Origin: Haliotis rubra
Lineage: Eukaryota
Reading direction: 5' to 3'
Assembly (NCBI RefSeq): GCF_003918875.1
Contig: NW_025766988.1
Location: 1,054,001 to 1,118,000, forward strand
Length of the DNA stretch: 64,000 bases
Shown here in pieces: positions 9,042 to 58,932 of this stretch. The notes under the pieces were generated by a model. That model ran no database searches, was not told where the DNA came from, and was given only the letters and a program-made list of their open reading frames with translations. The position numbers and the translations under genes are program-made. The stretch's first letter is position 1. The number at the start of each line of letters is the position of its first letter.

Positions 9042-10916
9042 TTAATTGTCAAGGTAGTCATAAACTTGCACATTTCCTCGACAGACCACCCATAGTTTGT
9101 CTCCAGGTCCAGTGGAAACTAGGCGTGGCCACTTAATGCCGTCAGACTCCCCCATGAGGAAGCGGAGGAAGTCACCTTGGGCAGACAGAAGATGTAGTTT
9201 GTTGTTACAGCCGTCAGCAACGATGATGCGACCGAACTTGTCACAGCAGATACCTCGAGGGCAGAATGAGCTACGAAGCTTGAGACTCTCTGGTGGGATG
9301 TAGCGAGCCTTGACCTGGAAGTTCCTATTCAGGATGACTACACAGCTGGCTCCTTTGTCAGACACGCAGATGTCACCATTGATGTTGACTGCGATGTACC
9401 TGGGGGCCATGAAGATCTTCTTGCCATCCTCCTCAATGACCTTCTGCAGCAGGTCGCCCCGCTCTGAGAACACCAGAAGGGCATTGTCAGAGTCTCCGTT
9501 GGATTCTGATGTACAGAGGACAATTTGGTTCTCCTGTGTAAGGACCATACCTCTGGGTGGCAGGCCAACATCTGCAAACTCCTGCAGAGGTTCCGCTTTA
9601 CCTTTGTAGATGTACAGCTTTCTCTCCTGTTTTGATGTCATCAGAAACTCCCGGCCGAGCTTAACAACTCGAGTATTTCCATCAGGCTTGAGGGCAATAT
9701 CTTCCTTTTTCTCCCCATTGAAGTCATACTTTACGAGTGCACTTCCTTCAGAGGTGTAATAGGACACCCATGCTTGTGTTGAAGACACAGGAATAAGGCT
9801 GAACTCTACAAAGTGGTCAGTTTCAAAATGGAAGGCTGGTCTAAGCTTCAAGGGTTCAAAGCCAAACATACCACAAAAGTTGCTAAGAATCTGAGTCCCA
9901 TATATTCCTGTTGCAAAAATGGTCTGTTTCTCATCCAACTCTTTAGCCTGAAGTTTAGCATATCTCTCGAGGACATCACTGATATCTTTAGCAACACGGA
10001 CAATTTGTACTGCAGCGCTGAGTCGAAGAACTTCTTCTGACTCCTGAATGGATCTCAGGAGGAGGTCATGGTCTTCTTTGATGTCTTCATACTCTGCCTG
10101 AATGGCCTTTTTCTCTGCGTCCATCTTCTCCTGGACAAACTTGATTCCGTCGTCACACATCTGCTCCACCATCCTCTTCACCTCTTCCCTTCGCGTTTCG
10201 ACCGCACCGACCACCACCTCCCCATTCACCTTCATCCTGTCACGTGCCTCATCAGCCTTCTCTTTGGCAGCCTTGAACTTTATCACCAGCATCTTCAGCT
10301 CCTCCACCATGTCAGTCAGCCTCTCCCTGTCTAAGTCTGCAGCTTTAGCTATGTCGATAGCCTCATGACCATAGTGTACTGTCTGACGGCAATCTGTGCA
10401 GACGGGCACCTTGCACTCGGTGCAGTAGAACTTGAGTTCCTGACTTGGATGCTTTTCACACATCTCCATAGTTTCAACAGTTTTCCTCCCATCCCCCATG
10501 ACCAGGATGTGGTGGTTCTGAGTGTTCTCATCACTCTTGTGCAGCTCCTTGCAGGACATACACAGGTTCTTCCGACACTCAATACAGAACCCGACAGCAG
10601 AGTCCACACTCCCACACACTCCACATGTCATATCGCCTGACTCAATCTCCGACATTGCACAGTTCGCCATCACAAAATAGCTGCTGGGGAAACCGTTGAC
10701 GCCATTGTGAGGAACAGGAACGGATCGTCGGCACTGGGGGCAGTGGATGACCTCTTTCCCCTGGTCTGTGACAGTGTTGTTCGAGTGCTTGATGTGCTTC
10801 TCAAGACAGTCCCTGCAGAAGGTGTGGAAGCAGGGCAGCTGCTTCGACTGCTTCACCTTGTCCAGACAGATCCCGCAGGTGAGACCCTGGACAGCGGCCT
10901 GAGGTTGCTCTGCCAT
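9042..10916 (-). CDS. TRIM-NHL family E3 ubiquitin ligase (RING, B-box1, B-box2, coiled coil, NHL/beta-propeller), about 624 aa, single coding exon
   Basis: C3HC4 RING (CGIC...LPCFHTFCRDC...CPQC), B-box1 (CGVC...CIEC...CMSC...H), B-box2 (CEKH...YCTECKVPVCTDC...HYGH), helical K/E/A-rich region and NHL-like repeats (PRGMVL, PRYIAVNINGDICVSD, PRGICCDKFGRIIVAD). A splice acceptor (ttttccttccgcag, AG at 10927-10926) lies just upstream of ATG 10916 (MAEQPQ), so the 42 extra N-terminal residues of the 666-aa ORF come from intron and 5' UTR. No filamin domain is seen and the orthologue is not assignable. Confidence 0.93.
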   Translation of the reverse strand: MAEQPQAAVQGLTCGICLDKVKQSKQLPCFHTFCRDCLEKHIKHSNNTVTDQGKEVIHCPQCRRSVPVPHNGVNGFPSSYFVMANCAMSEIESGDMTCGVCGSVDSAVGFCIECRKNLCMSCKELHKSDENTQNHHILVMGDGRKTVETMEMCEKHPSQELKFYCTECKVPVCTDCRQTVHYGHEAIDIAKAADLDRERLTDMVEELKMLVIKFKAAKEKADEARDRMKVNGEVVVGAVETRREEVKRMVEQMCDDGIKFVQEKMDAEKKAIQAEYEDIKEDHDLLLRSIQESEEVLRLSAAVQIVRVAKDISDVLERYAKLQAKELDEKQTIFATGIYGTQILSNFCGMFGFEPLKLRPAFHFETDHFVEFSLIPVSSTQAWVSYYTSEGSALVKYDFNGEKKEDIALKPDGNTRVVKLGREFLMTSKQERKLYIYKGKAEPLQEFADVGLPPRGMVLTQENQIVLCTSESNGDSDNALLVFSERGDLLQKVIEEDGKKIFMAPRYIAVNINGDICVSDKGASCVVILNRNFQVKARYIPPESLKLRSSFCPRGICCDKFGRIIVADGCNNKLHLLSAQGDFLRFLMGESDGIKWPRLVSTGPGDKLWVVCRGNVQVYDYLDN

Positions 10917-13871
10917 ATTGTAGCACTGCGGAAGGAAAACATCATGCTTAGAAGTAGTACAAGAGTGGTAACAAGTGTGGGTTAGAAGTGTGCAAAATTG
11001 GTAAAAACATGAATCTTTGTTCATGAACAAACCTAACATCACATTTAAAAGTAGGGTATACTTTTTTCCTTGGTTAAAAGATATATTTTCAGTACATCAG
11101 TCTTGACAGTTGTGTGCATGATTTATAATGGAATTTTGGTAACTAACTCAACAGGAAAATTTTTGGACTGTTCCAGTAAGACAACTATAATGTTATTTGG
11201 AAGACATACTGATACATGTGATTTGGGGGTACCGGTATGTTTGAAAACTAAGGCTTTGCATTATCTGTTTCACAGGTTTTGGATTTACATAGTTCATTCA
11301 TAAAAGAACCTGGTTGGGAAGTGAAAAATAATTCATTTAAAAAAAATTACATTCCACTTTTCATGTTTGGCAGAATGCATTAACCAATGATTAAGAAAAA
11401 GATTCATGCAGAGGACACTAGTAGGTTCCAACCTTGTCTGAAGAGGGATTCAAAAGTGGGGATTCAAAAGTGGGTTACCATAACTTTTCTTCAACAAAAG
11501 ATTTTGCTGTTATACAGGACTTCAAGAACCTGAACCTGAAGCCAAATCAGTGACTAATCATTGAACAGGGATACAATCAGTTGAGATCATTCCCAGGAAT
11601 CAATGCTGGTACTACTTATCTATACTGCTGCTATGCATTATTCACATGGAGCCACCACACCATGACCAGATTGTCAATAAGGTATTCTCCAGAACAGCAC
11701 ATGTACAACACATGTACAGCCAAATCAATACACAATAACACAGAGTATTACACTTAAAGCCAGGACGATTCTCAATACCAGGAAACATCCCATGCTAGCA
11801 CAGAGCTTCACATTCAGGGGAATATTCCTCATTGTGTAAGGCTCCAGTGTGGATGTAAGTGAAGGACCAGATATGAGTAATATAGGACAATAGGACAAGG
11901 TGACCCATACATTGCATGTGGGTGGGTGAGTGGGTGCGTGCAATGAGTGAGTGGATGAGTGAGTGGATGAGTGAGTGAGCAAGTAATGGAAATAGAAAAA
12001 GAAAAGAGGTTCTACAAATATGTAAAATGTTTGGCTTGCTTGAAATATAACAAGAAACACTACTTTTTCGATTCATGTTAATTTTATTGGGCATTAAGTT
12101 TTTCAGGTTTACTAAATAAATAAAATTGACCATAAATTTATGTAGCTCAATATTTATTTGTATTTCACGTCCAGATTATGTTAATTTGGGTTGGAAATTC
12201 AGGCCACTTTTCAGTTTCACTTGTTAAACAATAGTTATGGAGTCATGAATTTCCAATCAGGGTCCGATTAAGAATTTGATTTATAACAAGTATCTGTGCA
12301 AACTATTTCAGAAAAATGCAAACTAATATTTATGACTACATACACCAAGCATGTGGCAAGTGCATGTCAAGATATTTCAAACCTGTGTCTGACTAACCCT
12401 TACATATCCGGACAACACTTACTCATCTCTGAACACACTGAACAACTCTGTGCTTTATAGACCATACTACTGTGTTATGTATAAACTGTACGTGTCCTTG
12501 TATTGTTGATTATCAGACATTTAAGAAACATTCACTATTATTTTTCTAGTCACGTGAAGAATTTTAAAATATCTCAGTAATTAATAAAATATAACGCTAA
12601 CCTAAACACGAGCTATTATTAAATAATTGGCAATGTCTGTGTGATGCCAAAACCACTGCTACAGCTGGAGTAAGCCAGTGTTTCCACTGGCATTTTTTAC
12701 AGCTGGACATTATGACCGGCTAGCCTTTTAAATACGGGTCATTTATAAATTTTACCGTCAATGATCACGCTTTTCATTGTGCTGCGAGACCTTGCACCTT
12801 AACTATCAATCAGAAATGTAGAGGGTATCGCAATGCATCAATGCCGCTTTTTCTAGCCTGGGATTTTCCAAAACTGCTAATTTTTATTTGACAACACCTC
12901 GATGTCATTGTGAAAACATAATTTTTTCGAGGAGAAATATACTAGTAATTGACAGAGGCAAAGAGAAAATTGATTTTAGAATTTGCCAGACACGATGACC
13001 GACAGCCTTTGAAATTACCGGTCAAAGTCCGGTACATAACGGATAGCGGAAACACTGGTAAGCACTGCCATTCAAAAAACATACTACCTGGGATAGCCAA
13101 GTGGTTAAAGCGTTCGCTCGTCACACTGAAGATCCGGGTTCAATTGCCCACATTAATACAACGCTGGAAGCCATTTCCATATTGCTTAAAAAGCCATAAA
13201 ACCACACTCACTCACTAACTTTTCATGTCTGGTGTCGAGTTAAATCAAGTTCCTTAAATCGAGCCATGACAATTGATCAACAACATAAACAACACCACCA
13301 ATATATATTCAGTCAGTCATCATTTCTCTATCAAGTATCTTGGAAGCCCTGACTGATGCTGTGTAAGTGACCACATTATCACACCATTGTTACAATGTCA
13401 GTGTAACTTCCTGAACATGACATAATGTTAAAGTGAGTGAGTGGGTTTGTTTTACACCACTTTTAGCAATATTCCAACAATATCATGGCGGAGGACACCA
13501 GAAATGGGCCTCACACATTGTACCCATGTGGGTAATCGAACCCAGGTCTTCAGCTGACGAGCAAACGGTTTAACCACTAGGCTACCCCACCGCCAATAAA
13601 ATGTTAAGAGAGGCGAAGCCAGATGATCTGGGGTCAGTTTCCTGCACAGGTTGAGATAATGCAGTGAAACTAAGGTACTGTCTGTGGGTAATTAGCCTGA
13701 TTGGCGGGGAGATTACTGGATGGGGATCTTTACTTCCCTGATCACATACTGAACAAAAAATATTGATCCTTACTGAAATACTTTATTCGTGTTAATATCT
13801 GTCCTTACCTCAATTGAAAACTTAATATTTTAATCAAATGTGTGATAATTAACACTGCCAACTGTAAGTTG

Positions 13872-18401: not shown

Positions 18402-18546
18402 NNNNNNNNNNNNNNNNNNNNNNNNNNNNNNNNNNNNNNNNNNNNNNNNNNNNNNNNNNNNNNNNNNNNNNNNNNNNNNNNNNNNNNNNNNNNNNNNNNN
18501 NNNNNNNNNNNNNNNNNNNNNNNNNNNNNNNNNNNNNNNNNNNNNN
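18402..18546. other. Assembly gap
   Basis: Run of N. Confidence 1.
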
Positions 18547-24186: not shown

Positions 24187-26421
24187 CTAGGGCCCTGCCG
24201 GACGTTCTATCTTCACAAGGGCTGTGTCCTTCACGTTTACATGATGGGCTTCGACCCTCCCCGAAGTTTGTTCTCGCCTTGTGTAGCACCTACTATAGCT
24301 ATAAGATTTGAAAAGGTGTTGATGAGATCTCCAGTGTTCGATGTTATCAAACATAGGCCATGATTCTCTTTGCACATAGGGCCTCTTCCTGTACTGCGTC
24401 GGAGGACTACAGGACTCTGACCTTTGATCACAAACGACAATTCTAGTGTCACAACGAGAGTTCCTTCCTTCTGGACACTTGGTGGTACAGTCTAAAGCAG
24501 TGTTGCCCCAAAATTCTTTAACAGGTTTTGTGTCATCAACGGCAATGGGCAAATTCGTGGCGTGATGTTTTCTAGGAAGCGTACCTGGAGATACTCTCTC
24601 ATCAGTGGAACTGGACTGAGTTGTACCATCGGTAGAACCTTCTGGTCTACTGTTTGTCACTGAGCAACTGTTGATAGAATGTGATAAATCCGAAGATTCT
24701 GACATAAAAGTTCCGTTCTTCTCTACAAATGAATGGGGAATCTGTGACATCATTGGCACAGATTGAGTTCTGAGTGAATCTGTTGCTGATGCTTTGGTTG
24801 GATGCTGATACCGAACCGGACTCATTGACACCCATTGTGTTGATATGGGAGGTGTTGACTCTGGATTGCCTTCTTTGTTTTCAGGACTAGCTGGAACAGA
24901 AGCATCATCTTCCTCTGGACGATGTTTCGAATCAGATCTAAAAACCTCGTTCTTGTAATCATGTTCCATCTTCAAGGGAGCCATTGGACTCTCTGGCAAG
25001 TTTTCATAGGCGTCTTTTGACGTGTCTGGTGAATATGTACATTGCTGTTCATCTATGATGAGTTTCATCGCGTCTTCTGAATCAGCCAAAATATCAGGAA
25101 TCCATTCTTGGTTATCTTCTTCAGTGAAAGGGATACCCAGTGAGGAATATTCTTTGTGTGATATTTCTTCTTTACATATTGATTCCAACTCATTCTTTTC
25201 TTCAGTTGGAATGACGGGAATGGGTGTTGACGTGTTCAGTATGATATCAGTCAAATGATATTCTTCTCCAGAAACTTCAAAAGACCCCTGACCTGGTGCT
25301 GGTGACATAGTGGTGTCCATGTATCTCGTGGATGTCTTGCTCTTTAGTACCGTTACTTTAGAAGATTTGGTTACTCTAGTCTCCTCAGCTGATGGCACAT
25401 GTAGGATTTTCTTGAGGGAAGATAAAGCCTTGACTCTTTCTACTCCAGGGCATTCCCCTGTCTCTGATGTTTTCTTCTCCAAATGTTCACTGGGCGCCTT
25501 CTTCACGTCTGCTTCTGGTATGTAATATATTTTCTTGTTAAGTAAAACGGAACATGACTTCGTCTTTGTGGTGTGTTCTTTTGTGCCAAGAGCTGCCGGA
25601 GCATTGGTTAAATGCTTTGTGGATTTAGTCTGAAGTGCTTTAGAGAGCAGGTTCGCAGCAGTTGTTTTAGGTTTCTTGTGGTTCATTTGACATGTTCCTT
25701 TGAGTGATGCTAATTTTCCCCCTTCAGACTCAACTTTATGGACGTCTGATTCAAAAACTGTCATTTTGTCTCTTTCGCTTACATCATCATTTTTCTTTTT
25801 CAAAAGGTTTCCACTGCCCAAGAACTTCTTGCTTCTACCTTGACTAGCTCCAGTGAGATTGCTGTGTGATTGCTGCGGAGATTCACTCCTCTTCTTCTTT
25901 ACTTGTCTAGGATCAACTCCAATGAAACAACTATGAGTTGGAGAGCCACTACTCTTGTGAGGCACAACATCCCCCATCTCTATATGGCAATCTTTGTCAG
26001 CAGTTGTGATCATGCCTGTGATTCCATGTGTTGACACGATGGCAGTAGGTACAGCTGCAGCTCCTCCACCATCCTCGGTGTACCTTTTAGGGTAGGAATA
26101 TTTGGGTTTTTCTCCCTGTAACTTGGTGATACACCTGAAGTACGACTTCCCATTACAATTGTGCTCATGTACGTCCGAGTCGATCCAGGACACAGTCAAA
26201 TGCTTCATTTTCTTCTTCGGAAGATTTCTGAGGAACTTGCCTATTTCCTGACGTATTCTCCCTGGCATGAGCCTTTTCAAGTGTCGACGGATGTTGAGTG
26301 ATTTTCCTATGTAGATTGTCTTGTGTTTGTAGGCGATCTTAAACACACCCCTCATTGGGTGTTTGTTTGGCAGCTCATAGTACGGCATATGGCTTGTTTG
26401 GAGGAGCTCACACGGTGGTAC
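24187..26421 (-). CDS. ZnF-GIY-YIG family copy 1, coding exon 2 (GIY-YIG-like domain plus about 630-aa low-complexity tail); joined protein about 892 aa
   Basis: Phase-0 acceptor ttctcctcag|GTA at 26421, in frame with the 733-aa ORF. Motif GVFKIAYKHKTIYIGKSLNIRRHL...HEHNC...SYFRCITKLQGEKPKY. Confidence 0.88.
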   Translation of the reverse strand, partial: VPPCELLQTSHMPYYELPNKHPMRGVFKIAYKHKTIYIGKSLNIRRHLKRLMPGRIRQEIGKFLRNLPKKKMKHLTVSWIDSDVHEHNCNGKSYFRCITKLQGEKPKYSYPKRYTEDGGGAAAVPTAIVSTHGITGMITTADKDCHIEMGDVVPHKSSGSPTHSCFIGVDPRQVKKKRSESPQQSHSNLTGASQGRSKKFLGSGNLLKKKNDDVSERDKMTVFESDVHKVESEGGKLASLKGTCQMNHKKPKTTAANLLSKALQTKSTKHLTNAPAALGTKEHTTKTKSCSVLLNKKIYYIPEADVKKAPSEHLEKKTSETGECPGVERVKALSSLKKILHVPSAEETRVTKSSKVTVLKSKTSTRYMDTTMSPAPGQGSFEVSGEEYHLTDIILNTSTPIPVIPTEEKNELESICKEEISHKEYSSLGIPFTEEDNQEWIPDILADSEDAMKLIIDEQQCTYSPDTSKDAYENLPESPMAPLKMEHDYKNEVFRSDSKHRPEEDDASVPASPENKEGNPESTPPISTQWVSMSPVRYQHPTKASATDSLRTQSVPMMSQIPHSFVEKNGTFMSESSDLSHSINSCSVTNSRPEGSTDGTTQSSSTDERVSPGTLPRKHHATNLPIAVDDTKPVKEFWGNTALDCTTKCPEGRNSRCDTRIVVCDQRSESCSPPTQYRKRPYVQRESWPMFDNIEHWRSHQHLFKSYSYSRCYTRREQTSGRVEAHHVNVKDTALVKIERPAGP

Positions 26422-26654
26422 CTGAGGAGAAGGTATTTATAATATATTCACTTTGTGAACTGCCAGACAAAACAATTTTCATCAACAGAAGTTTGCAATT
26501 GAATACTTAACTGATTATCACTGATACCTGTTCCGCAGAATACGTTGCTGCTCTCAATCTGACATTTGTATTTACAGTGAAGTTGTGACTTGTCATTGTT
26601 TTTTACGTAAACAGAAGCATTATTAAACAAATACTAAACTTTTCCATACATTAC

Positions 26655-27098
26655 CTTCTTAAGCGTATCTGAATTTTGATATTGTGGGGTAATGAAAGAT
26701 CCAGGTACTTGGCTATCATGGGCCAGACTCACACCAGGTATTTTGTTTGTTTTGACTGACCCCAAACCACTGTGTGTCTTTGTACCACTGAGTCTGGCTG
26801 TTTCCTGTTCAGATGTCCAGTCCTTGGCATCTGATCTGTCCGGAAGATATTTTGATTTTCTAGGTCTACCTGGCCCATATATGACAGGTAGTTCATCTTC
26901 TGAGGCAATTTCTGTTTTAGTTCCAAAAATTGGAAAGGACTCTTGTAGATTTGACGTCTTCCTGAGGTCTTCATGCTTCACTGGCAGACAGCCACAATAG
27001 CCGCATGCATGTCCCTCAGGTTGTGGTACATATTGGGCACACTGTCCACATGCGCAGCTTCCCCGGGGAACACCTCGCTTGTCTTCAACGTAGGACAT
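26655..27098 (-). CDS. ZnF-GIY-YIG family copy 1, coding exon 1 (Cys6-His module plus linker)
   Basis: Acceptor cgcag|G at 27116, ATG 27098 (MSYVEDKRGVPRGSCACGQCAQYVPQPEGHACGYCGCLPVKH), phase-0 donor AAG|gtaatg after 26655. Confidence 0.85.
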
Positions 27099-30600: not shown

Positions 30601-30758
30601 NNNNNNNNNNNNNNNNNNNNNNNNNNNNNNNNNNNNNNNNNNNNNNNNNNNNNNNNNNNNNNNNNNNNNNNNNNNNNNNNNNNNNNNNNNNNNNNNNNNN
30701 NNNNNNNNNNNNNNNNNNNNNNNNNNNNNNNNNNNNNNNNNNNNNNNNNNNNNNNNNN
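30601..30758. other. Assembly gap
   Basis: Run of N. Confidence 1.
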
Positions 30759-31472: not shown

Positions 31473-32590
31473 TTATTAATCGATCTGGACCAGACAATCC
31501 AGTGATATACAGCATGAGGATCGATCTGCGCAGTTGGGAACCGATGACATGTGTCAACCAAGTCAGCAAGCCTGACCAACCGATCCCGTTAGTGGCCTCT
31601 TACGACAAGCATGGGTTATTGAAGTTCAGTATTCTAATCTGGGCCTTCATGGGTATTTTTCGGACCAAGTGTAAACGTGGAGAAAAAACCTAGAGCAAAA
31701 TATTAGGGTAGTGAGCACCTTGGTTTCAGGTGCAAGTGCGTGAGAACGCTGGGTATCAAGCATAATATAATAATAATAAATGCATATTTATAGTGCGCCT
31801 ATTCCACATCCTTGGGCATGCTCAAAGCGCTGTGTACAGATAATTTACACGAGAATATTTACAGCCAAGATTATAAGTAATATACTGAGAACAGGTTTTA
31901 AGTCTGGACTTAAAAAATGTGAATTGTGTCAGAGCTTTTATTATGTGTCTGAACCTTGTCAATCAGAATAAACAAGGCGTGACGAGGCATCCTCTATAAC
32001 GTATCTAGAATCTGTCAGTGGTCTTGAATAACACGCGGCCTGCCTTTAGAATCCCCCACCAAATAAGCGCACGTGAAATCAAACATATTTGTATCTTTTT
32101 TGTTTCAGAACATTGTTCACTTCAGGGCTGTCCCATTCTTAACCATGACGTTGCAATATTGTTGTACAAATGTCTTACAAATGCTCGGTTGTGTTCCCAT
32201 GACGACAGTGGTCAGACTGGCCTGACATTTGTAAGGCTTCAGTGCAGTGTTTGTTTACATCACAGAAACATACAAATTCATTTCATGGGGGATTTTAGTG
32301 GACGCTCACGGTGAAATGCTCGCTCTTATTTTTCACATAGAATAGGAAAGCCACCATTTTGGTTTCTCTACGATTGATTTAAGCTATCCTAAGTTGGTCA
32401 TGAGCAACTTAGACTTTGAATCTTAACATTACGATTGTCTTGGGTAAGATTGGTTAGTGGAACGGTATGCCGATCGTAACGTCACGATAAAGGCTTGATT
32501 CAGTTATGGGTATCTTAGATGATCATTCTCGTCGATGTAAGATATTTGGTTTATGAATTATATAACTGATATTGGTAGTTTTACTGGATG

Positions 32591-32977
32591 TTACACCACC
32601 ATTTGGAAGTAGGTTTTTTTGGTAAGTGGTAGATTGAACTTGGGTCTAGTGCCCTGCAAGTCTTCAATACACTTCATATAACTTTTCTTTGCGCAGTTGT
32701 GGACGTACTTTGTTTCGTCCAGATAATACACTGTCACCTTCTCCAGGTCTCGCTGACTCAGGCGTTTAATAAAGTCGAACAGATCTGACCGGCCGTGACC
32801 GCTGAAGTGACTCTTCAGTGTAGGTTTGATCTTACAGGACATCGGGCCCACGTAGATTGTCTGCCAGTTGTAGGCGATCTTGTACACTCCTTTGACATTA
32901 TATGGGATTTGTTCCATCTCGGTGAAGGGGATGTGGCCTGTCTGCAGAACATTGCATGGCTTCATCTTCAGCAAACC
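32591..32977 (-). CDS. ZnF-GIY-YIG family copy 2, GIY-YIG-like exon (no long tail)
   Basis: Acceptor tttatcctag|G at 32977 (phase 0). GVYKIAYNWQTIYVG...LKSHFSG...VHNC...SYMKCIEDLQGTRPKFN is clearly homologous to copies 1 and 3. Phase does not match the upstream donor. Confidence 0.8.
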   Translation of the reverse strand, partial: GLLKMKPCNVLQTGHIPFTEMEQIPYNVKGVYKIAYNWQTIYVGPMSCKIKPTLKSHFSGHGRSDLFDFIKRLSQRDLEKVTVYYLDETKYVHNCAKKSYMKCIEDLQGTRPKFNLPLTKKTYFQMVV

Positions 32978-33808
32978 CTAGGATAAATGGACAGACAATG
33001 AAAGCAATGTTTAACGCCGCACTCAGCAAGCAATATCACAGCTATATGGGTTAGAACTGATCATGCTCTTCAGTAAGCCATGCTTGCCGTAAGAGGCGAC
33101 TCGAGTAACGGGATCGGGTGGTCAAACTCGCTTACGTGATGAAGGATAACAATATATGGATGAACTTCTTTATTGCTGTGAGAGCGGGTGGTTGACACAT
33201 GTTATCGTATCCCAATTACGTAAATCGATGCTCATGATGTTGATCATTGGATTGTCTGGTCTAGAGTCGATTATATACACACCGCCGCCATATAGCTGTA
33301 ATATTGCTTACACTCACTCACTCACTCAGTACTTGATTCCTATCGCTTCTTTTGTATTGGTTCTTGAGCTGCGTATTTGTGACCTTTCGTCAAAGAAAGT
33401 GCATGTTTCACATTAGAAGCTGGGCTAATGGACTGGTCAGTCATTACAGGGGCGAGTGAGATTACACGATTATTGGCAGGGGGTGTTGGTGGAATGACAT
33501 GAAAAAATGACAGCGAAAGAGGATATGAGTGTGGTGGAGCCGTGTCTTTAAAAAAAGTGAAACGTGAAGATTTCTGTGGCACTTGTGTGTGTTGTAGGGG
33601 GTAATGGTGGATGAAAACACCGTTCATTCGTATTTTGGGATGGGAGTGGGTCCTCTTCTTCCGTAAATAATTTACCAGTCGGTTAGACGGTGCATTTAGT
33701 GCACGTATAACGCCGAGGCGATGGTCAAGTTGTAAGTGACAACATGCCAGTTTGTTCTGCTTTCATGGAATTTGTTACTGAGAAGGTTGATGGTTTTATA
33801 GAACATAC

Positions 33809-34215
33809 CTCAATCCCACGAACAACCGTGTCTGTTTTGGTCCAGTCGTAGTACCCTTCGGCTTCTTTTTGGATGGTTCTCCACTGAGATCATCCAAAGC
33901 ACGTTTCTTGTTCTTGGTCGTCTTCAACAGGCTAGCAAAGTCCACAGTTACGTTTGGGTCCGTGAGCGACCACGACTTTGTATCCGACAGAGGGGCTGAT
34001 GTTGTGCCAGACATATTCTCAGAATATGGCACTAATGAATCACACGAGGTGTCAGAGACGTCATCATCTTCATCCTCATCGGGGCTGACCCTCATCACGA
34101 CGGTATGGTCACTTGGCGCACATCCACACGTGGTGCAGTTGACACCGTCGTCCGGAGCGTTATAGCTGTAGCAGCTACGACATTTGCAACCGAAGTTGAA
34201 TTCTGCTGGTTCCAT
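33809..34215 (-). CDS. ZnF-GIY-YIG family copy 2, coding exon 1 (Cys6-His module, acidic patch, bipartite NLS-like segment)
   Basis: Acceptor cctttcag|C at 34224, ATG 34215, CKCRSCYSYNAPDDGVNCTTCGCAPSDH, strong donor AG|gtatgt after 33809 (phase 2). Confidence 0.78.
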
Positions 34216-35500: not shown

Positions 35501-35721
35501 CGAAAGACATGCCGCTATATATAGAATGACCAGAAATTATTGAGAATTTTAGGAATATGTTTAATTGGATTTCTAGTATTTATATAAACAACCTTGACCA
35601 GCTATCAAGTGCTTAGTTTCATTCAAGAGAGACAACCCTGTTAATCCTTTTTCATTAGTTTGTGAAGAGTTATCCCCATTTGTTTACTTGATAGCAGACG
35701 ACATTTTCAGTGATCCTCAGA

Positions 35722-37236
35722 ATGGCTGATTTAGAGAAGAGGAAGTTGATTTTAGAGTATAACAAGGACATCAGATCAGCTAAAGTGATTTCAAGTAGAA
35801 CAGGCATCCCTTTGTCCACTGTTTATCGTCTTTTGAAAAATATTGCAGATGGACATGGCATTGAGCACCATGGAGGCGCAGGTAGGCCCAGAAAATTGAC
35901 AGTCGGTGACAGGAGGAGGCTTGGTATTCTTGTTTCTAAAAACAAACGAAGGAGTTTAGAAAACTTAAGGCTGGATATGATTGATAGAGGACCTGTGGCT
36001 GTCTGTAAGGAGACAATTAGAACTGAGCTCCATGCAATGGGTTGGCAGAAAAGTAGAGGAATTCCATCACCGATCATGAAACCTGAACAAAAGGAGCGAA
36101 GGTTGAACTGGTGCTTACAGCATAGAAATTTTAACTGGGACAATGTGATTATCTCAGATGAAAGTTCTGTGTGGCTGTTTCCTAATACACTGAAATTCTG
36201 GACCAAACAAACTAAAAAACATTTGTATCAGCGCCCAAAGTACAGTCCGAAATTTAACGTGTGGGGTGGCATATGTGTGTTAGGGGCAACGCCCCTCTGT
36301 GTATTTGAAGGGAATATGAACAGGTCTGTCACACATTGATGTGTACACCCAAGCAGGTCTGTCACACGTTGACCTGTACACTCAAGCAGGTCTGTCACAC
36401 ATTGACCTGTACATCCAAGCAGGTCTGTCACACATTGACATGTACACCCAAGCAGGTCTGTCACACATTGACCTGTACACCCAAGCAGGTCTTTCACACA
36501 TTGACGTATACACCCAAGCAGGTCTGTCACACATTGACATGTACACCCAAGCAGGTCTGTCACACATTGACATGTACACCCAAGCAGGTCTGTCACACAT
36601 TGACCTGTACACCCAAGCAGGTCTGTCACACACTGACTTGTACACCCAAGCAGGTCTGTCACACACTGACCTGTACACCCAAGCAGGTCTGTCACACATT
36701 TATGTGTACACCCAAGCAGGCCTGTCACACATTGATGTGTACACCCAAGCAGGTCTGTCACACATTGACATGTATACCCAAGCAGGTCTGTCACACATTG
36801 TCCTGTATACCCAAGCAGGTCTGTCACACATTGATGTGTACACCCAAGCAGGTCTGTCACACAGCGGTACACAGATATTGTCGAGGGACATTTACTTCCA
36901 TCTGCTCACGTGTTCTATGGAAATGTTTGGATTTTCCAGCAGGACAACGACCCAAAACATCGTTCAAAGCATTCACAGGCCTGGTTTCGGACCCAAAATA
37001 TGACATTATTAGATTGGCCAAGCTATAGCCCTGACCTAAATCCAATAGAAACTGTTTGGGGACTTATGAAGGAAAGTGTCAATAAGAAAAATCTGACAAA
37101 TATTGCTGAAATGAAAGAAGAGGTGGTCCGATATTGGGACAGCATGGACCACGACTTTCTAACTTCTTTGATCAGTAGTATGCCCCGCCGCATTGAAGCC
37201 TGCATTGCTGCCCATGGTGACTTGACAAAATACTAA
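35722..37236 (+). pseudogene. Tc1 transposase, disrupted
   Basis: HTH region, GRPRK linker, ISDES (D1), FQQDNDPKH (D2), WPSYSPDLNPIE (E), with 34 residues between D2 and E. Split by the 33-bp array, which has TGA in the transposase frame. Confidence 0.92.
36321..36863. repeat. 33-bp minisatellite, 16 full units plus a partial unit
   Basis: Unit CAGGTCTGTCACACATTGACATGTACACCCAAG; first and last CAGGTCTGTC lie 528 bp (16 x 33) apart. Confidence 0.97.
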
Positions 37237-40432: not shown

Positions 40433-41456
40433 GGCCTCCCAGATGCTATGTTTGGAACTTTTGTCTGTGGGCGTGCCTCTCCAGAAGCTTTGTTTGGAAC
40501 TTTTGGCTGTGGGCGTGTCTCTCCAGAAGCTATGTTTGGAACTTTTGTCTTTGTCTGAGCTTTGGGAACGTTTCTCTCAGAACGGAAGCTATGTTTGGAA
40601 CTTTTTGTCCGAAGGCCGTGTCTCTCTCTCCAGAAGCTATGTTCGGAACGTTTGTCTGTGTACGTGGCCGCCCAGAAGCTATGTTTGGAACGTTTGTCTG
40701 TGAACGGGGCTCTCCAGATGCTTTGTTTGGAACGTTTGTCTGTGAACGGGGCTCTCCAGATGCTTTATTTGGAACGTTTGTCTGCGAACGTTGCTCTCCA
40801 GATGCTTTGCGTGAAACGTTTGTCTGTAAACGTTGCTCTCCAGATGCTTTGCGTGAAACGTTTGTCTGTAAACGTTGCTCTCCAGATGCTTTGCGTGGAA
40901 CGTTTGTCTGTGAACGTTGCTCTCCAGATGCTTTATTTGGAACGTTTGTCTGTAAACGTTGCTCTCCAGATGCTTTGCGTGGAACGTTTGTCTGTAAACG
41001 TTGCTCTCCAGATGCTTTGCGTGAAACGTTTGTCTGTAAACGTTGCTCTCCAGATGCTTTGCGTGGAACGTTTGTCTGTGAACGTTGCTCTCCAGATGCT
41101 TTATTTGGAACGTTTGTCTGCGAACGTTGCTCTCCAGATGCTTTGCGTGGAACGTTTGTCTGTGAACGTTGCTCCCCAGATGCTTTATTTGGAACGTTTC
41201 TCTGTGAACGGGGCTCTCCAGATGCTTTCCGTGGAACGTTTGTCTGTAAACGTTGCTCTCCAGATGCTTTATTTGTAACTTTTGTCTGTGAACGTGGCTC
41301 CCCAGAAGCTATGTTTGGAACTTTTGTCTGTGAACGTAGCTCTCCAGAAGCTATGTTTGGAACTTTTGTCTGCGAACGTTGCTCTCCAGATGCTTTGCGT
41401 GGAACGTTTGTCTGTAAACGTTGCTCTCCAGATGCTTTGCATGGAACTTTTGTCTG
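40433..41456 (-). repeat. 42-bp coding tandem repeat (14 aa, QTNVPRKASGEQRS), about 24 units including degenerate ones
   Basis: Visible in DNA and protein; continues past the ORF stop at 40530 in a shifted frame. Confidence 0.95.
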
Positions 41457-43166
41457 AGAGCTCTGATTTGAAGGACATGTCTGAGTACTGGAGACAATGG
41501 GCTCACAAACCAGCATCCCTACAGAATTGGCACCTGGGCTTTTGTACGGCAAAGATGTTGTCTCATTCTTTGTTACGAGGTTCCTACTTCCACTAGGCTT
41601 TATACTCCAACCAACAGAGCCCGGTTTGGCGGGTGCAGCTTTTAACATTATCTCCAACAGTTTGGAGATATCTCTTGTAGGTACACCTGTACGTGACCTT
41701 GTGGTATCTGGTTCTGGTTCAGATACAGCATGGGACGTGAGCACAGAAAGTGTTTCTGCGAGACCTGAAGGTGATGTCGAAGAAACAGGAGGTATGTTCC
41801 TTTCGGGATCATTTCCTCCACGAGCACATGTTGTTGATTCCTTGTGTTTTTCATCTGAGTGTTCATTTGTTCCTGGATCTTTCTCTGGGGACCTTAACGC
41901 CCGCCTGGGTTGTATTGCTGTATGTAGAGACTGCGTAGAACTGACGGTGTGTGTCTGTTCATTTCTTTCAGAGGATGCTTGGAAACTGGGGTTTGTTTTC
42001 TGTGAATGTTCCTGGGGAGCTGTTAAGTAATGTCGAAATGTTTCTTCACTGGGCGATTCACATTTATCTCCGGCTGGCTGTAGTTGTAGCTTCTTTTGGA
42101 AATTCTTATCTACCTGTAGTGTGGTAGGACAGGCAGGTGGGTTCTCTTTAGAGACAGTTGAAATTGGGATATTGTCATTTTTATCCTTTCTAATGTTTGT
42201 GCGTCCAGCCATGCATCCAACTGTATCATGTTGGATTCTCTCTTCAAATTCAGGTGATCGGGGGGAAATACAGAACTGTTGAGGCAACTCACGGGTTGTA
42301 AGATTTTCATGGTTCGAGGACATATCAACAGAAGCTCCTCGTATTGACTGAGATCTTTGTTTGTATGATGACTTGGTCATGACTGGGCTTCTTGGGATGT
42401 TGCTCAGCGACATCTCTGGTGTGTCTATGTTCTGCATCTTTAAGTTCATGTTTGTACTGGGCACCGTGGTTGAAAAGTATAAGTTTGCTGTTTCACTTCG
42501 GCAGATAGGAGTGTCCTTGGGACTCTTTGTCAGACAATGATGCATTGAATGTTCTACATGTTGATCAGTCTTCATTTTCTTTGAATCGGTATGGAACTGC
42601 GATTTCTCTCGATCCTCTTCCGCGGGTCTCTTCCTCGACATCAAACTGAAATCAGGTGCAGTATGTTTATCTAACGAGCTCAATCTCCTTCGAAAAACCT
42701 TTTTTCGCTCTTCTGTACCGTTGCTAGGTCGGACAGATACATCCTGTGATTGTCCATTTTCATGTGTGAAGGTTTTGGAATCAGCATTGACAACTGCCAC
42801 ACTGGCAGTCGACATGGAGCAGAGAATCGGTTGTATGTCGTTAAACTTTGGTTTCTTTCCCTGTAGGTATGTGATACATTCCAGGTAGGACTTACCACAG
42901 TTGTGGACATGTATGGTCTTATCCAGCCAGTACACTGATACCATCTCAAGTTCCTCCTCGGGGAGATTCAGCAAGAATTCTATTAAGTCCTGCTTGCCAT
43001 TACCACTGAACTGCTTCCGAAGATCCTTGATGATATTGCTTGATGAACCGACATAGATGGTCTCCCACCTGTAGGCAACCTTGTACACTCCACTAGGCCT
43101 TAACTTTGTCCGAACGATGACTGGGTATGGAACATGACCTCTGTGCAACAGCTTGCATGGTTTCAT
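40530..43166 (-). CDS. ZnF-GIY-YIG family copy 3, GIY-YIG-like exon with long disordered tail and 14-aa tandem repeats (878 aa; probably extends to 40321 across a 1-nt frameshift)
   Basis: Acceptor tttatttccag|ATG at 43166. GVYKVAYRWETIYVGSSSNIIKDL...HVHNC...SYLECITYLQGKKPKFN, followed by about 2.3 kb of open frame. Confidence 0.87.
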   Translation of the reverse strand: MKPCKLLHRGHVPYPVIVRTKLRPSGVYKVAYRWETIYVGSSSNIIKDLRKQFSGNGKQDLIEFLLNLPEEELEMVSVYWLDKTIHVHNCGKSYLECITYLQGKKPKFNDIQPILCSMSTASVAVVNADSKTFTHENGQSQDVSVRPSNGTEERKKVFRRRLSSLDKHTAPDFSLMSRKRPAEEDREKSQFHTDSKKMKTDQHVEHSMHHCLTKSPKDTPICRSETANLYFSTTVPSTNMNLKMQNIDTPEMSLSNIPRSPVMTKSSYKQRSQSIRGASVDMSSNHENLTTRELPQQFCISPRSPEFEERIQHDTVGCMAGRTNIRKDKNDNIPISTVSKENPPACPTTLQVDKNFQKKLQLQPAGDKCESPSEETFRHYLTAPQEHSQKTNPSFQASSERNEQTHTVSSTQSLHTAIQPRRALRSPEKDPGTNEHSDEKHKESTTCARGGNDPERNIPPVSSTSPSGLAETLSVLTSHAVSEPEPDTTRSRTGVPTRDISKLLEIMLKAAPAKPGSVGWSIKPSGSRNLVTKNETTSLPYKSPGANSVGMLVCEPIVSSTQTCPSNQSSQTKVPCKASGEQRLQTNVPRKASGEQRSQTKVPNIASGELRSQTKVPNIASGEPRSQTKVTNKASGEQRLQTNVPRKASGEPRSQRNVPNKASGEQRSQTNVPRKASGEQRSQTNVPNKASGEQRSQTNVPRKASGEQRLQTNVSRKASGEQRLQTNVPRKASGEQRLQTNVPNKASGEQRSQTNVPRKASGEQRLQTNVSRKASGEQRLQTNVSRKASGEQRSQTNVPNKASGEPRSQTNVPNKASGEPRSQTNVPNIASGRPRTQTNVPNIASGERDTAFGQKVPNIASVLRETFPKLRQRQKFQT

Positions 43167-44826
43167 CTGGAAATAAATGCAGTATTTTATCTATCATTAC
43201 TCATATCATAAGACCCGGCTTAGAATTGATGTTCAGTAACAAATGCGTATCGTAAGAGGTGATTGATGGGATCGGGTGGTCAGGCTCGATGACTTAGTTG
43301 ACATATGTCATCGTAACCCAATTGCGTAGATCGATGCTCATGCTGTTGATCACTTGATTGTCTGGTCCAGATTCCATTATTTACAGACCGCCGCCGTATA
43401 GCTGGAATATTGCTGAGTGCGGAGTAAAACAACCAACCAACCAACCAACCAACCAACATGACAGGTGTTATTGGTGAGCCCCGTTTGGGCCCAACTTCCA
43501 TACAAGTCATCAAGCCAGCCTTTAAAACATCATGAGCGAGTGAGTTGTGATTTAATATTGAATGCCAGTGTGAAAGAATCACCGGTCTTGACAATCATCA
43601 GAAACAAATTCCGTTTGGTGTAAAGGGAAAATAGTTCTGAAATTATATAACTAGATCACTGAAAATCACTGATGACACCAGGTGTTCGCGAAGAGGGTGC
43701 GCATGTCCTGCCCTATCGGTAGCTTTGAACACAGCTTTAAATACTGTCCGTTTCTTCACTTTCACGCGAAAGCAAAGCCAGAAATAATGTAGGTTTCTGG
43801 GTATTTTACGAAATTTGTGAAAAGGACAAGCATGCTGATTACAATCCTGAAACCACGATCATGGGTTTCTGGCACGCTTAACACTGTGCGAACTGTGCCT
43901 GGGACGACTCGGCGTCCCCGCTCCATCCCTGCCTGACGTTTGATTTTACGCCAGGTGGTTCCACTTTCAAACTTTACCAAAAGAGGGTCTAACAATACAT
44001 AGTATTCGATGAACATTCTCATGTTTGTAATTCACATAATTTTAGCAGTTGTCAAGCATTTAGCACAAAGTATGAAATGTGTTTTAAACTATACCAACTA
44101 AATATTTATGCTGAACTAGTGACGCTTTTGTCAAAGGTGGTCACGAATGAGTCTAAAAGTTGCCATAGCTTTAGTACAGTGCATAAATGAACATTTAAGA
44201 TATATTGAACATTTTCCGCGTAGAAAAGGTAACTTATGTGTTTATGATCAGTTAACAACGAAATGAAGTCATTAATTGGCTATTGACCAATATAGTTTTG
44301 GAAGCATTCCTGTTACTTGGGGACGGTGTGGTTCGATGCTCGATCACACGTATTGGTACAATATGTGCAACCCGTCCCCCTTTATGTCACCGGGATATGT
44401 CTGAAGGCGCCGTTAAACAACATTCTCTCTCATTTGTATTACTTACGTCAATCAAGGGTAAATGGTTTGTTTTTGCCATCGTAGTTGGTTTGTCTTGTTT
44501 TCTATTCAACAACAATCCTGTCTCCGCAGATAACACTGTATCTATATCATGTCCTGCATCAATGCATGGTTTTTGGAGCTCTCTCAAGCGTTGGGACTCT
44601 TTTTGGGGGGTTATTCCAGGTTCCGACCAAGCGAGCAATGGTTATCAGTTAGGCATTTAGTCATCGATACAAACAAAATACGCTTTAAATAACGCTGCTT
44701 TCTGCTTGGATGTTATAAAGCAACGCTGTTGGAACCGTCATTACAAGCACGTGTTATCAGTCTCGATGTTGTTGGTTCTAACAAAAACCATTCCTCATTT
44801 ACTACAGGAGACGGACTGTCAACCCA

Positions 44827-56208: not shown

Positions 56209-56570
56209 ATGGCAGTGTTCACGGACATCAACAGAGATAAGTACGGGGTTGTTCGGGGTCGGTGTAAGGACTGCCCCGAGGAGTGTCCACAGTATTCCCA
56301 GCCTGTCCTCAGACACAACTGTACGTATTGCGGGTGTCCGGCAGGTCAACATGAGAGGGTGGAACCTCGACCGGAACTCATCATCAAGACAGAACCTGGG
56401 GAGGAGGAGGCACGATCTCCGGGACGGAGAGATGGCAGACCAACACCGGGTCCATCCAGAAGACCAGATGGCTGGACCACGGTCCCACCCCAGCCTGGTC
56501 CCTCCAGGCGAAATGAGTCGCCTCACCGGGATGAATCGCGAACAGTAATCCAGGTACAATTTCAGGTTAG
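56209..56570 (+). CDS. ZnF-GIY-YIG family copy 4, coding exon 1 (Cys6-His module plus P/R/G-rich linker)
   Basis: Acceptor ttctactcctag|AC at 56207, ATG 56209, DKYGVVRGRCKDCPEECPQYSQPVLRHNCTYCGCPAGQH. Candidate donors after 56553 and 56565 (phase 0) or 56570 (phase 2, ag|gtaaaa). Confidence 0.82.
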
Positions 56571-58529: not shown

Positions 58530-58932
58530 AAAGGTTGTAAGACGTTATTTGAGAATGAGGGTGTCGAGTATTCTCAAGTTAAGAGACACCTCAGCAGAAC
58601 AGAAGCGTGGCGTGTTCACAATCCTGTGGAAGGGGAAAATAATTTATGTTGGAGATCCAAAGAAGACGCCCATATTAACTTGTCTTCGAAGCATATTTAA
58701 TGGTGGAAGCAATCAAGACATCAGCAAATGTTTGAAAAACTTACGCAACGATTTGAAAAGAGCTCACGTCAGAATCGCCTGGCTGAAACACAAAGATGAT
58801 GACCCGCACCTCAAGACGTGTAGAGAAGGCAAGAAAGGGTTGTCATATCGACAATGTCTGTCAAATCTGCAGGGGGAGAAGCCAAGGGATGTGCTTAAAG
58901 GTTTAATGAGAGAGGAAACCATCAATCTGTAG
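58530..58932 (+). CDS. ZnF-GIY-YIG family copy 4, GIY-YIG-like exon; joined protein about 254 aa
   Basis: Acceptor ctttgttggtttcag|A at 58530 (phase 2, matches donor 56570; AAG|G at 58534 would match the phase-0 donors). GVFTILWKGKIIYVG...IFNGGSNQDISKCLKNL...SYRQCLSNLQGEKP. Confidence 0.8.

What the first reader, a model, noticed from the sequence alone, without database searches (positions are those of the whole stretch)
26090..26421. All four GIY-YIG domains lack the catalytic arginine: probable pseudo-nucleases
Known: GIY-YIG nucleases use YIG-x-[ST]-x-[ND]-L-x-x-R-x3-H, a metal-binding Glu in a later helix and a C-terminal Asn. Seen: the Arg position is H (NIRRHL), T (KIKPTL), D (NIIKDL) and C (PILTCL). 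The first Tyr is F in copies 1 and 4, the His survives only in copy 2, the Asn only in copies 2 and 3 (PKFN), and no Glu is conserved across copies. The hydrophobic scaffold is conserved. Inference: the fold is kept for non-catalytic binding such as structure-specific DNA/RNA sensing or a decoy role.
Basis: partly seen in the sequence, partly recalled or inferred. Interest (0 to 1): 0.75.

Follow-up and report, generated by a model that had tools for sequence, protein, structure and literature searches.

The report
Abalone dead GIY-YIG nuclease-like domains
Four neighbouring abalone genes carry a domain with the fold of the GIY-YIG DNA-cutting enzymes; all four have lost the essential catalytic arginine, yet the domain is still conserved by selection, so it most likely binds something rather than cutting DNA.

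Summary
The window is Haliotis rubra. It holds exactly four paralogous ~100-aa domains (c1-c4).

**They are GIY-YIG.** Pfam does not recognise them. A profile built from them finds small mollusc proteins that are Pfam GIY-YIG, including one from H. rubra itself. Profile-profile probability is 99.5%. A confident AlphaFold model (pLDDT 85) matches only GIY-YIG nucleases.

**The catalytic residues are gone.**
- 18 of 18 canonical relatives keep Arg, His, Glu and Asn.
- At the Arg column the window copies have H, T, D and C.
- Glu survives only in c4, His only in c2, Asn only in c2 and c3.
- No family member keeps both Arg and Glu.

**The domain is still under selection.** dN/dS is 0.13-0.22 in the domain and 0.55-0.77 in the tails. 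In c1 the most conserved stretch is the former active-site helix. "Pseudo-nuclease" is therefore well supported. What the domain binds is inference only.

**Caveats.**
- Tyr-to-Phe and loss of Asn are not diagnostic of inactivity.
- In this assembly c2 carries two 1-nt A-run indels and c4 one 1-nt insertion relative to orthologues.

Earlier notes of this scan report another, different dead GIY-YIG family (vWA fusions) elsewhere in this genome.

The parts
26655..27098 (-). c1 exon 1: N-terminal Cys6-His module (CxCxxC...CxxCGCxxxxH) plus linker
   Evidence: The NCBI model P0001 (892 aa) equals 148 aa from this exon plus 744 aa from exon 2. The module is conserved in orthologues.
24187..26421 (-). 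c1 exon 2: helix a0 (PCxLLxxxHxPY), GIY-YIG-like domain, then a ~630-aa poorly conserved tail
   Evidence: ORF. The AG acceptor at 26422-26423 is read. 100% identical to P0001.
26095..26349 (-). c1 GIY-YIG-like core (GVF...YIG...NIRRHL...PKYS). His at 26281-26283 replaces the catalytic Arg.
   Evidence: AF2 model pLDDT 84.7. Fold matches are to GIY-YIG only.
33796..34215 (-). c2 upstream ORF with the Cys-rich module. It has a 1-nt shorter A-run near its 3' end than the orthologues.
32591..32977 (-). c2 domain exon. Core 32633-32890; Thr at 32819-32821 replaces Arg. A 1-nt longer A-run after the domain puts the orthologues' C-terminal WWC-x-x-Q end in another frame.
44447..44479 (-). c3 short first exon (11 aa, no Cys-rich module), followed by a GTAAGT donor
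   Evidence: NCBI model P0004. Coordinates. The same structure is seen in H. asinina P0006.
40530..43166 (-). c3 exon 2: GIY-YIG-like domain (core 42840-43091; Asp at 43023-43025 replaces Arg) and a long tail with about 25 tandem 14-aa repeats
56209..56553 (+). c4 exon 1: Cys-rich module
   Evidence: NCBI model P0070, LOC124283492, 247 aa. Alignment A4.
58534..58932 (+). c4 exon 2: GIY-YIG-like domain (core 58609-58893; Cys at 58681-58683 replaces Arg; Glu column kept). A 1-nt insertion relative to H. asinina (and, by their protein sequences, to paralogues), just upstream of strand 1, puts the a0 segment in another frame.

Best explanation
**Descent (shown).** The four domains are true descendants of a small, canonical GIY-YIG nuclease family that still exists intact in molluscs, including in Haliotis rubra itself.

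**New architecture (shown).** In an abalone lineage a copy became fused downstream of a Cys6-His (probably zinc-binding) module. It then duplicated into a gene cluster with very different C-terminal parts: long disordered tails, tandem repeats, or a CaaX-like end.

**Loss of chemistry (losses shown; inactivity inferred).** All copies lost the catalytic Arg, and each lost at least one more of His, Glu or Asn. No member keeps both Arg and the metal-binding Glu. The canonical one-metal phosphodiester cleavage chemistry of GIY-YIG enzymes should therefore be gone.

**Retained function (selection shown, ligand inferred).** The fold is kept under purifying selection, and in c1 the old active-site helix is the best conserved stretch. 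The former substrate-binding face has probably been reused as a binding surface. I favour nucleic acid for the very basic c1 and c4 domains. A protein partner is about as likely for the neutral c3 domain.
For: **Homology**
- A profile of the four copies finds canonical GIY-YIG proteins down to E about 1e-10.
- 16/35 aligned members hit PF01541. H. rubra P0029 and H. cracherodii P0014 score above the gathering score.
- hhalign, dead clade against canonical clade: 99.5%, E 2.6e-23, 113 columns.
- The family profile hits the UvrC N-terminal domain 1YCZ at E 7.7e-6, T4 EndoII and I-TevI.

**Fold**
- AF2 model: pLDDT 84.7, pTM 0.79, order b-b-a-a-b-a.
- The Foldseek top 24 are all GIY-YIG.
- VIA-align: Z 8.1 to EndoII, 7.4 to 2LWF, 6.3 to UvrC.
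- ESM Atlas fold hits are predominantly GIY-YIG-annotated clusters, the rest unannotated. ESM features score 0.96 to GIY-YIG clusters.

**Residues**
- Column table: Arg, His, Glu and Asn are 18/18 in canonical relatives. In the dead clade they are 1/13, 5/13, 2/13 and 7/13.
- Seven further c4-type paralogues have N, Y or S at the Arg column.
- The substitutions are identical in orthologues from H. asinina and H. cracherodii, so they are old.

**Selection**
- dN/dS is 0.13-0.22 in the domain, against 0.55 and 0.77 in the tails.
- The c1 conservation peak (0.93) lies on strand 2 and helix 1.

**Established knowledge**
- The superfamily is defined by GIY, YIG, a central Arg and a C-terminal Glu (PMC1564403).
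Against: - No biochemistry was done.
I could not check whether R45/R46/K49/R50 of c1, or the clade-specific Asp after strand 3 (W-[LIV]-D, 11/13) and His (10/13), lie near the old active site.
- c4-type copies keep the Glu, and P0031 keeps the Arg.
- Net charge of the core varies from +16 (c1) to +1 (c3), so one common nucleic-acid ligand is not evident.
- In this assembly c2 and c4 carry 1-nt frame disturbances relative to orthologues.
Confidence: 0.75

Rival explanations
1. The domains are still nucleases with a rewired active site. Neighbouring basic residues (for example R45/R46/K49/R50 in c1) and a relocated acid (the clade-specific Asp after strand 3, or the Glu kept in c4) would replace the canonical Arg and Glu.
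For: - Strong purifying selection, with its peak exactly on the old active-site helix.
- W-[LIV]-D is conserved in 11/13 and a nearby His in 10/13 of the dead clade only.
- Tyr2 is kept in 11/13.
- c4-type copies keep the Glu.
Against: - The Arg column holds at least 10 different residues across the clade (H, T, D, C, Q, G, A, N, Y, S), with no conserved substitute nearby.
- The flanking basic residues of c1 are not shared by c3 or c4.
- No member keeps both Arg and Glu.
- Arg and Glu are listed among the defining conserved residues of the superfamily (PMC1564403).
Confidence: 0.1
2. The domain is a protein-protein interaction or scaffold module with no nucleic-acid ligand, as has been proposed for the GIY-YIG-like Unc-1 domain of ANKLE2.
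For: - The c3 core is nearly neutral (+1), P0009 is -1 and P0031 is -5.
- The c2 lineage ends in a CaaX-like box, suggesting membrane tethering.
- ANKLE2 Unc-1 has a GIY-YIG-like fold, showed no nuclease activity, and the paper's supporting-figure list states that ANKLE2 does not bind dsDNA by EMSA (PMC13179284).
Against: - c1 (+16) and c4 (+11) are as basic as the canonical nucleases of the family.
- c1 and c2 keep the family-specific basic residue two positions before the lost Arg.
Confidence: 0.3
3. The copies are decaying relics of a nuclease gene family without present function.
For: In this assembly c2 has two 1-nt A-run indels that would put the domain out of frame. c4 has a 1-nt insertion that scrambles helix a0.
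Against: - Domain dN/dS is 0.13-0.22 in all four lineages across species.
- Open frames and the same architecture are found in H. asinina, H. cracherodii and H. rufescens.
- Order and orientation of c2 and c1 are conserved in H. cracherodii, and c4, c3 and c2 lie clustered in H. asinina.
- The c2 indels lie in homopolymers, a frequent kind of assembly error.
Confidence: 0.07

Closest known systems
Small canonical mollusc GIY-YIG proteins (H. rubra LOC124280682; H. cracherodii 'uvrABC system protein C-like' XP_071088857; Tegillarca granosa and Saccostrea cucullata proteins)
   Same: They are the closest sequence relatives: hhalign 99.5%. They share the domain length, an a0 helix with a Cys, the C-x-[E]-x-x-Y-x-x-C helix and the QG-x-x-P motif.
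   Different: They are 100-170 aa stand-alone proteins that keep Tyr, Arg, His, Glu and Asn (18/18) and reach the Pfam GIY-YIG threshold. The window copies lack these residues. They have an N-terminal Cys6-His module (c1, c2, c4) and long or specialised C-termini. The H. cracherodii canonical gene lies about 3.2 Mb from the cluster.
UvrC / Cho N-terminal GIY-YIG domain (PDB 1YCZ)
   Same: Best solved sequence match of the family profile (E 7.7e-6). The fold match is Z 6.3 over 79 of 89 residues.
   Different: No UvrC middle, RNase H-like or HhH domains (Pfam finds nothing). R39-equivalent lost; E76-equivalent lost in c1-c3.
ANKLE2 'Unc-1' domain (PMC13179284)
   Same: A precedent for an animal GIY-YIG-like fold without the motifs. 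It showed no endonuclease activity, and a scaffold role was proposed.
   Different: No ankyrin or LEM domains here. The abalone domains still keep recognisable GIY/YIG motifs and have clear sequence homology to active family members. They are lineage-restricted and multi-copy.
Plant EFFECTOR OF TRANSCRIPTION (ET) factors (PMC6585611, abstract only) and SLX1
   Same: Eukaryotic proteins that combine a GIY-YIG domain with Cys/His zinc-binding modules.
   Different: ET proteins are reported to nick DNA, and ET repeats differ from the N-terminal Cys6-His module here (not tested). SLX1 has a C-terminal RING finger (PMC1564403), and ANKLE1 and SLX1A keep the conserved Arg and Glu (PMC13179284).

Membership tests
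GIY-YIG superfamily (homology and fold) | Three-stranded sheet with flanking helices, order b1-b2-a1-a2-b3-a3 | tested here: met
   AF2 model pLDDT 84.7. Only GIY-YIG chains match: Z 8.1, 7.4 and 6.3. Foldseek top 24. Atlas.
GIY-YIG superfamily (homology and fold) | Significant sequence or profile similarity to accepted members | tested here: met
   hhalign 99.5%, E 2.6e-23 to the canonical clade. That clade reaches PF01541 above threshold. UvrC 1YCZ at E 7.7e-6. The window copies alone give no Pfam hit at E<=10.
GIY-YIG superfamily (homology and fold) | GIY and YIG motifs | tested here: met
   GV[FY] and Y[IV]G are present in all four copies.
Catalytically competent GIY-YIG nucleases | Central Arg on helix 1 (I-TevI R27 from my own knowledge; UvrC R39) | tested here: not met
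   H, T, D and C in c1-c4. 1/13 in the clade against 18/18 in canonical relatives.
Catalytically competent GIY-YIG nucleases | Metal-binding Glu in the C-terminal helix | tested here: not met
   G, K and G in c1-c3. Only c4 keeps Glu, and it lacks Arg, His and Asn.
Catalytically competent GIY-YIG nucleases | Measured nuclease activity | not testable with these tools
   Needs biochemistry.
UvrC / Cho | Additional UvrC domains (UvrB-binding, RNase H-like endonuclease, HhH) | tested here: not met
   No Pfam family on the full exons. There is only a 27-residue weak NCBIfam match to the UvrC N-terminus, E 0.026.
Penelope-like element endonuclease | GIY-YIG domain joined to a reverse transcriptase in one ORF of a repeated element | tested here: not met
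   No RT domain in the genes. They are spliced genes with conserved neighbours and orthologues in other Haliotis species. The RT fragments at 48588-49325 lie on the other strand and are unrelated.
SLX1 | C-terminal RING/PHD-type zinc finger after the GIY-YIG domain | tested here: not met
   The Cys-rich module is N-terminal and gives no RING/PHD Pfam hit.
Testin/LMCD1-type cysteine-rich domain (for the N-terminal module) | Sequence or profile similarity to the LMCD1/Testin Cys-rich region | not tested
Pfam, a PDB profile search and ESM features gave nothing usable for the module.

The most novel reading that the evidence does not exclude
The family could be a fast-diversifying, abalone-specific set of decoys or sensors built from a disarmed nuclease. 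The dead GIY-YIG face would still recognise the substrates or partners of the intact small mollusc GIY-YIG nucleases, or of invading GIY-YIG endonucleases such as those of Penelope-like retroelements. The Zn module, the variable tails or a lipid anchor would route the complex. This would make it a eukaryotic genome-conflict system built on a pseudo-nuclease. Together with the separate vWA plus dead GIY-YIG arrays noted elsewhere in this genome, it would point to repeated recruitment of disarmed GIY-YIG domains in molluscs.
Probability: 0.1. Interest if true: 0.75.

Novelty: new variant of a known kind. Interest (0 to 1): 0.42.

Why it matters
Few GIY-YIG pseudo-enzymes are described; I found one (ANKLE2 Unc-1, 2026). 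Here the active ancestor-like paralogue and a multi-copy dead clade coexist in one genome. The homology between them is clear, and the dead domain is under measurable purifying selection.

This gives a clean natural system for asking what a disarmed GIY-YIG fold is reused for. It also offers built-in controls: the intact paralogue, four differently substituted copies, and orthologues in several abalone species.

The family is unannotated ('uncharacterized protein') and invisible to Pfam, so the result also improves annotation of mollusc genomes. It does not open a long-standing question.

Tried and rejected
- **Direct family scans.** Pfam and NCBIfam on the four copies gave no GIY-YIG hit. The only traces were two weak NCBIfam matches to GIY-YIG-bearing models, E 0.026 and 0.2.
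- **Four-sequence profile against PDB.** Nothing.
- **AF2 with only four sequences.** pLDDT 62, and Foldseek gave noise. I replaced it with the 35-sequence alignment.
- **False positives.** Representative-search hits P0011, P0017, P0021 and P0039 are repeat proteins (LRR-like; bacterial MBG repeats) and were rejected.
- **Origin from a Penelope-like element endonuclease.** Rejected: no RT, spliced genes, synteny conserved.
- **Identity of the N-terminal Cys6-His module.** Pfam, a PDB profile search and ESM Atlas features gave nothing reliable.
- **Model coordinates.** They are not available to scripts, so I made no residue-level 3D check of the old active site.
- **Spliced gene models.** I never joined them by hand. 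Exons were searched by reference, and full-length products were used only as database proteins returned by the tools (P0001, P0004, P0008, P0070).
- **N stretches.** Those at 18402-18546 and 30601-30758 were left alone.
Full report
**What is at the coordinates.**
- On the minus strand, 26421 is the first base of exon 2 of a two-exon gene. Exon 1 is 27098-26655 and exon 2 is 26421-24187. The AAG|GTAATG donor and the ...CTCCTCAG| acceptor are read directly from the sequence.
- The product equals NCBI's 892-aa 'uncharacterized protein LOC124283497' of Haliotis rubra at 100% identity. The window is therefore blacklip abalone.
- tblastn of the domain against the window finds exactly four copies: c1 at 26044-26421(-), c2 at 32594-32974(-), c3 at 42801-43166(-) and c4 at 58549-58929(+).
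- The same search finds three upstream exons encoding a Cys-rich module, CxCxxC...CxxCGCxxxxH, for c1, c2 and c4.
- c3 instead has an 11-aa first exon. This holds both here and in H. asinina.
- The four domains are 34-43% identical to c1.

**Is it GIY-YIG at all?**
- Direct scans say nothing. Pfam finds no family at E<=10, and a four-sequence profile finds nothing in PDB.
- Weak pointers existed: two sub-threshold NCBIfam matches to GIY-YIG-bearing models, and ESM features at 0.96 to GIY-YIG and Eco29kI clusters.
- The decisive step was the profile search of 1.84 billion representatives. Besides Haliotis orthologues and paralogues, it found about 20 proteins of 96-166 aa. These carry the textbook pattern GIY...YVG-x-S-x-x-I-R-x-R-L-x-x-H ... 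C-x-E-x-x-Y-x-x-C ... P-x-x-N.
- Those with names come from molluscs:
  - H. cracherodii 'uvrABC system protein C-like'
  - H. rubra LOC124280682
  - Tegillarca granosa 'GIY-YIG domain-containing protein'
  - Saccostrea cucullata
- 16 of the 35 aligned sequences hit PF01541, best 1e-12. The two Haliotis canonical proteins exceed the gathering score.
- Profile-profile comparison of the dead clade (17 sequences) with the canonical clade (18 sequences) gives 99.5% probability, E 2.6e-23, over 113 columns.
- The joint profile reaches UvrC 1YCZ (E 7.7e-6), T4 EndoII and I-TevI.
- With the 35-sequence alignment, AlphaFold gives a confident model of c1: pLDDT 84.7, pTM 0.79, order a0-b1-b2-a1-a2-b3-a3.
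- The Foldseek top 24 are all GIY-YIG nucleases. VIA-align Z-scores are 8.1 (EndoII, 96 residues), 7.4 (plant Grx N-domain 2LWF) and 6.3 (UvrC, 79 of 89 residues). The Atlas fold search gives predominantly GIY-YIG-annotated clusters, the remainder unannotated.
- Four repeat proteins among the hits were false positives.

**The catalytic residues.** The table comes from alignment A3.

| Column | Canonical relatives | c1 | c2 | c3 | c4 | Dead clade (13 reps) |
|---|---|---|---|---|---|---|
| Arg (aligns to UvrC R39) | 18/18 | H | T | D | C | 1/13 |
| His | 18/18 | L | H | Q | I | 5/13 |
| Glu | 18/18 | G | K | G | E | 2/13 |
| Asn | 18/18 | S | N | N | V | 7/13 |
| Tyr1 | 15/18 | F | Y | Y | F | not tallied |
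| Tyr2 | 18/18 | Y | Y | Y | Y | 11/13 |

- No dead-clade member has both Arg and Glu.
- Seven more c4-type paralogues and orthologues carry N, Y or S at the Arg column.
- Orthologues in H. asinina and H. cracherodii carry the same substitutions as the window copies, so the losses predate those species splits.
- The superfamily is defined by GIY, YIG, a central Arg and a C-terminal Glu, whereas the Asn is dispensable (absent from Slx1) (PMC1564403).
Only Arg and Glu carry weight. Phe at Tyr1 also occurs in otherwise canonical relatives.

**Is the fold maintained?**
- Nei-Gojobori estimates between H. rubra and H. asinina or H. cracherodii orthologues:
  - domain dN/dS: 0.134 (c1), 0.18 (c2), 0.19 (c3), 0.22 (c4)
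  - tail dN/dS: 0.55 (c1), 0.77 (c3)
  - exons with the Cys-rich module: 0.25-0.43
- Along c1, three-species identity peaks at 0.93 on strand 2 and helix 1, the former active-site region. Further conserved islands are the Zn module, an acidic EWIPDILADSED...LIIDE motif, and the C-terminus.
- A tree puts c1, c2, c3 and relatives in one group (85/93). It separates this group from the canonical clade (89/98). c4 sits on a long branch, and a single origin of the dead clade is not excluded.
- The shared N-terminal module of c1, c2 and c4 argues for one origin of the fusion. This is inference.

**Mechanism.**
- Shown: descent from canonical GIY-YIG proteins, loss of Arg plus other catalytic residues, and purifying selection on the domain.
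- Inferred: catalytic death and reuse as a binding module.
- The c1 (+16) and c4 (+11) cores are as basic as the family's intact members. c2 is +7 and c3 +1. Nucleic-acid binding is plausible for some copies but not evidently for all.
- Clade-specific conserved residues could mark a new site: W-[LIV]-D after strand 3, an H-x-C, and the a0 motif PCxLLxxGHxPY.

**Integrity in this assembly.**
- c1 and c3 are intact.
- c2 differs from its orthologues by one base fewer in an A-run just before the exon-1 donor. It has one base more in an A7 run after the domain. In the other frame the end reads ...KWWCNIQ-stop. This matches the orthologues' WWCNVQ and WWCIIQ and the WCSIM of P0007, a CaaX-like box.
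- c4 has a 1-nt insertion relative to H. asinina (and, judging by their protein sequences, to paralogues), just before strand 1. NCBI's model (LOC124283492) therefore reads the a0 segment in another frame.

**Comparison with what is known.**
- The nearest relatives are the unstudied small canonical mollusc GIY-YIG proteins. The nearest solved structures are UvrC-N and T4 EndoII.
- The family is not UvrC/Cho, SLX1 or a Penelope-like element endonuclease, because the accessory domains are absent.
- The functional analogue is ANKLE2's Unc-1, which has a GIY-YIG-like fold and no nuclease activity (PMC13179284).
- Plant ET factors also combine zinc-binding repeats with a GIY-YIG domain, but they are reported to nick DNA (PMC6585611, abstract).
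- No paper mentioning both GIY-YIG and Haliotis concerns this family.
- Earlier notes of this scan describe a different family elsewhere in the same genome: arrays of vWA plus ET-type dead GIY-YIG domains. I did not test those.

**Verdict.**
- The 'probable pseudo-nuclease' reading is supported. The ligand and biological role remain open.
- This is a lineage-restricted new variant of a known kind: a disarmed nuclease fold reused as a module. Interest is moderate.

Noticed in passing
window 32560-32625 (-); L001:6060-6200; L002:4560-4700: The c2 lineage ends in a conserved CaaX-like box directly after the domain: WWCNVQ in H. asinina, WWCIIQ in H. cracherodii and WCSIM in P0007. In H. rubra the same end (WWCNIQ-stop) is in another frame because an A-run is one base longer. 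This suggests possible prenylation and membrane tethering.
   Followed up: partly
window 33800-33850 (-): c2 exon 1 has an A-run one base shorter than in H. asinina, just before the donor. Together with the second indel, this would put the domain out of frame. It is either an assembly error or a recent pseudogene.
   Followed up: partly
window 58534-58615 (+): c4 has a 1-nt insertion relative to H. asinina (and, by their protein sequences, to paralogues). The conserved a0 segment (GCKTLFENEGVEYSQ...) is readable only in another frame. NCBI's model LOC124283492 reads an unrelated peptide there.
   Followed up: partly
window 40560-41450 (-): The c3 tail contains about 25 tandem copies of a 14-aa unit (NVPxKASGEQRSQT). 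The H. asinina orthologue carries different repeats, so this repeat region evolves quickly.
   Followed up: no
P0013-P0038 (relatives, not in the window): The canonical small mollusc GIY-YIG proteins share four conserved Cys: the a0 Cys, C-x-E, Y-x-x-C and a C-terminal G-[DN]-S-C. Some have signal-peptide-like N-termini (P0018, P0022). They may be metal- or disulfide-stabilised, and perhaps secreted, nucleases. Nobody has studied them.
   Followed up: no
window 24400-24700 and 24950-25050 region of c1 (-), P0001 residues 579-615 and 783-892: Two conserved islands lie in the otherwise fast-evolving c1 tail. One is an acidic motif with a hydrophobic core (EWIPDILADSED..LIIDE, SIM-like). The other is a Cys/His/Arg-rich C-terminus.
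   Followed up: no
window 9042-11042 (-): A 666-aa intronless ORF with RING-, B-box- and NHL-like features (TRIM-like), typical of expanded mollusc families.
   Followed up: no
window 35710-36339 (+), 36228-37028, 48588-49325 (+): A Tc1/mariner-like transposase fragment, a minisatellite of about 10-aa units that is open in several frames, and reverse-transcriptase fragments. These are ordinary repeats lying between the paralogues.
   Followed up: no
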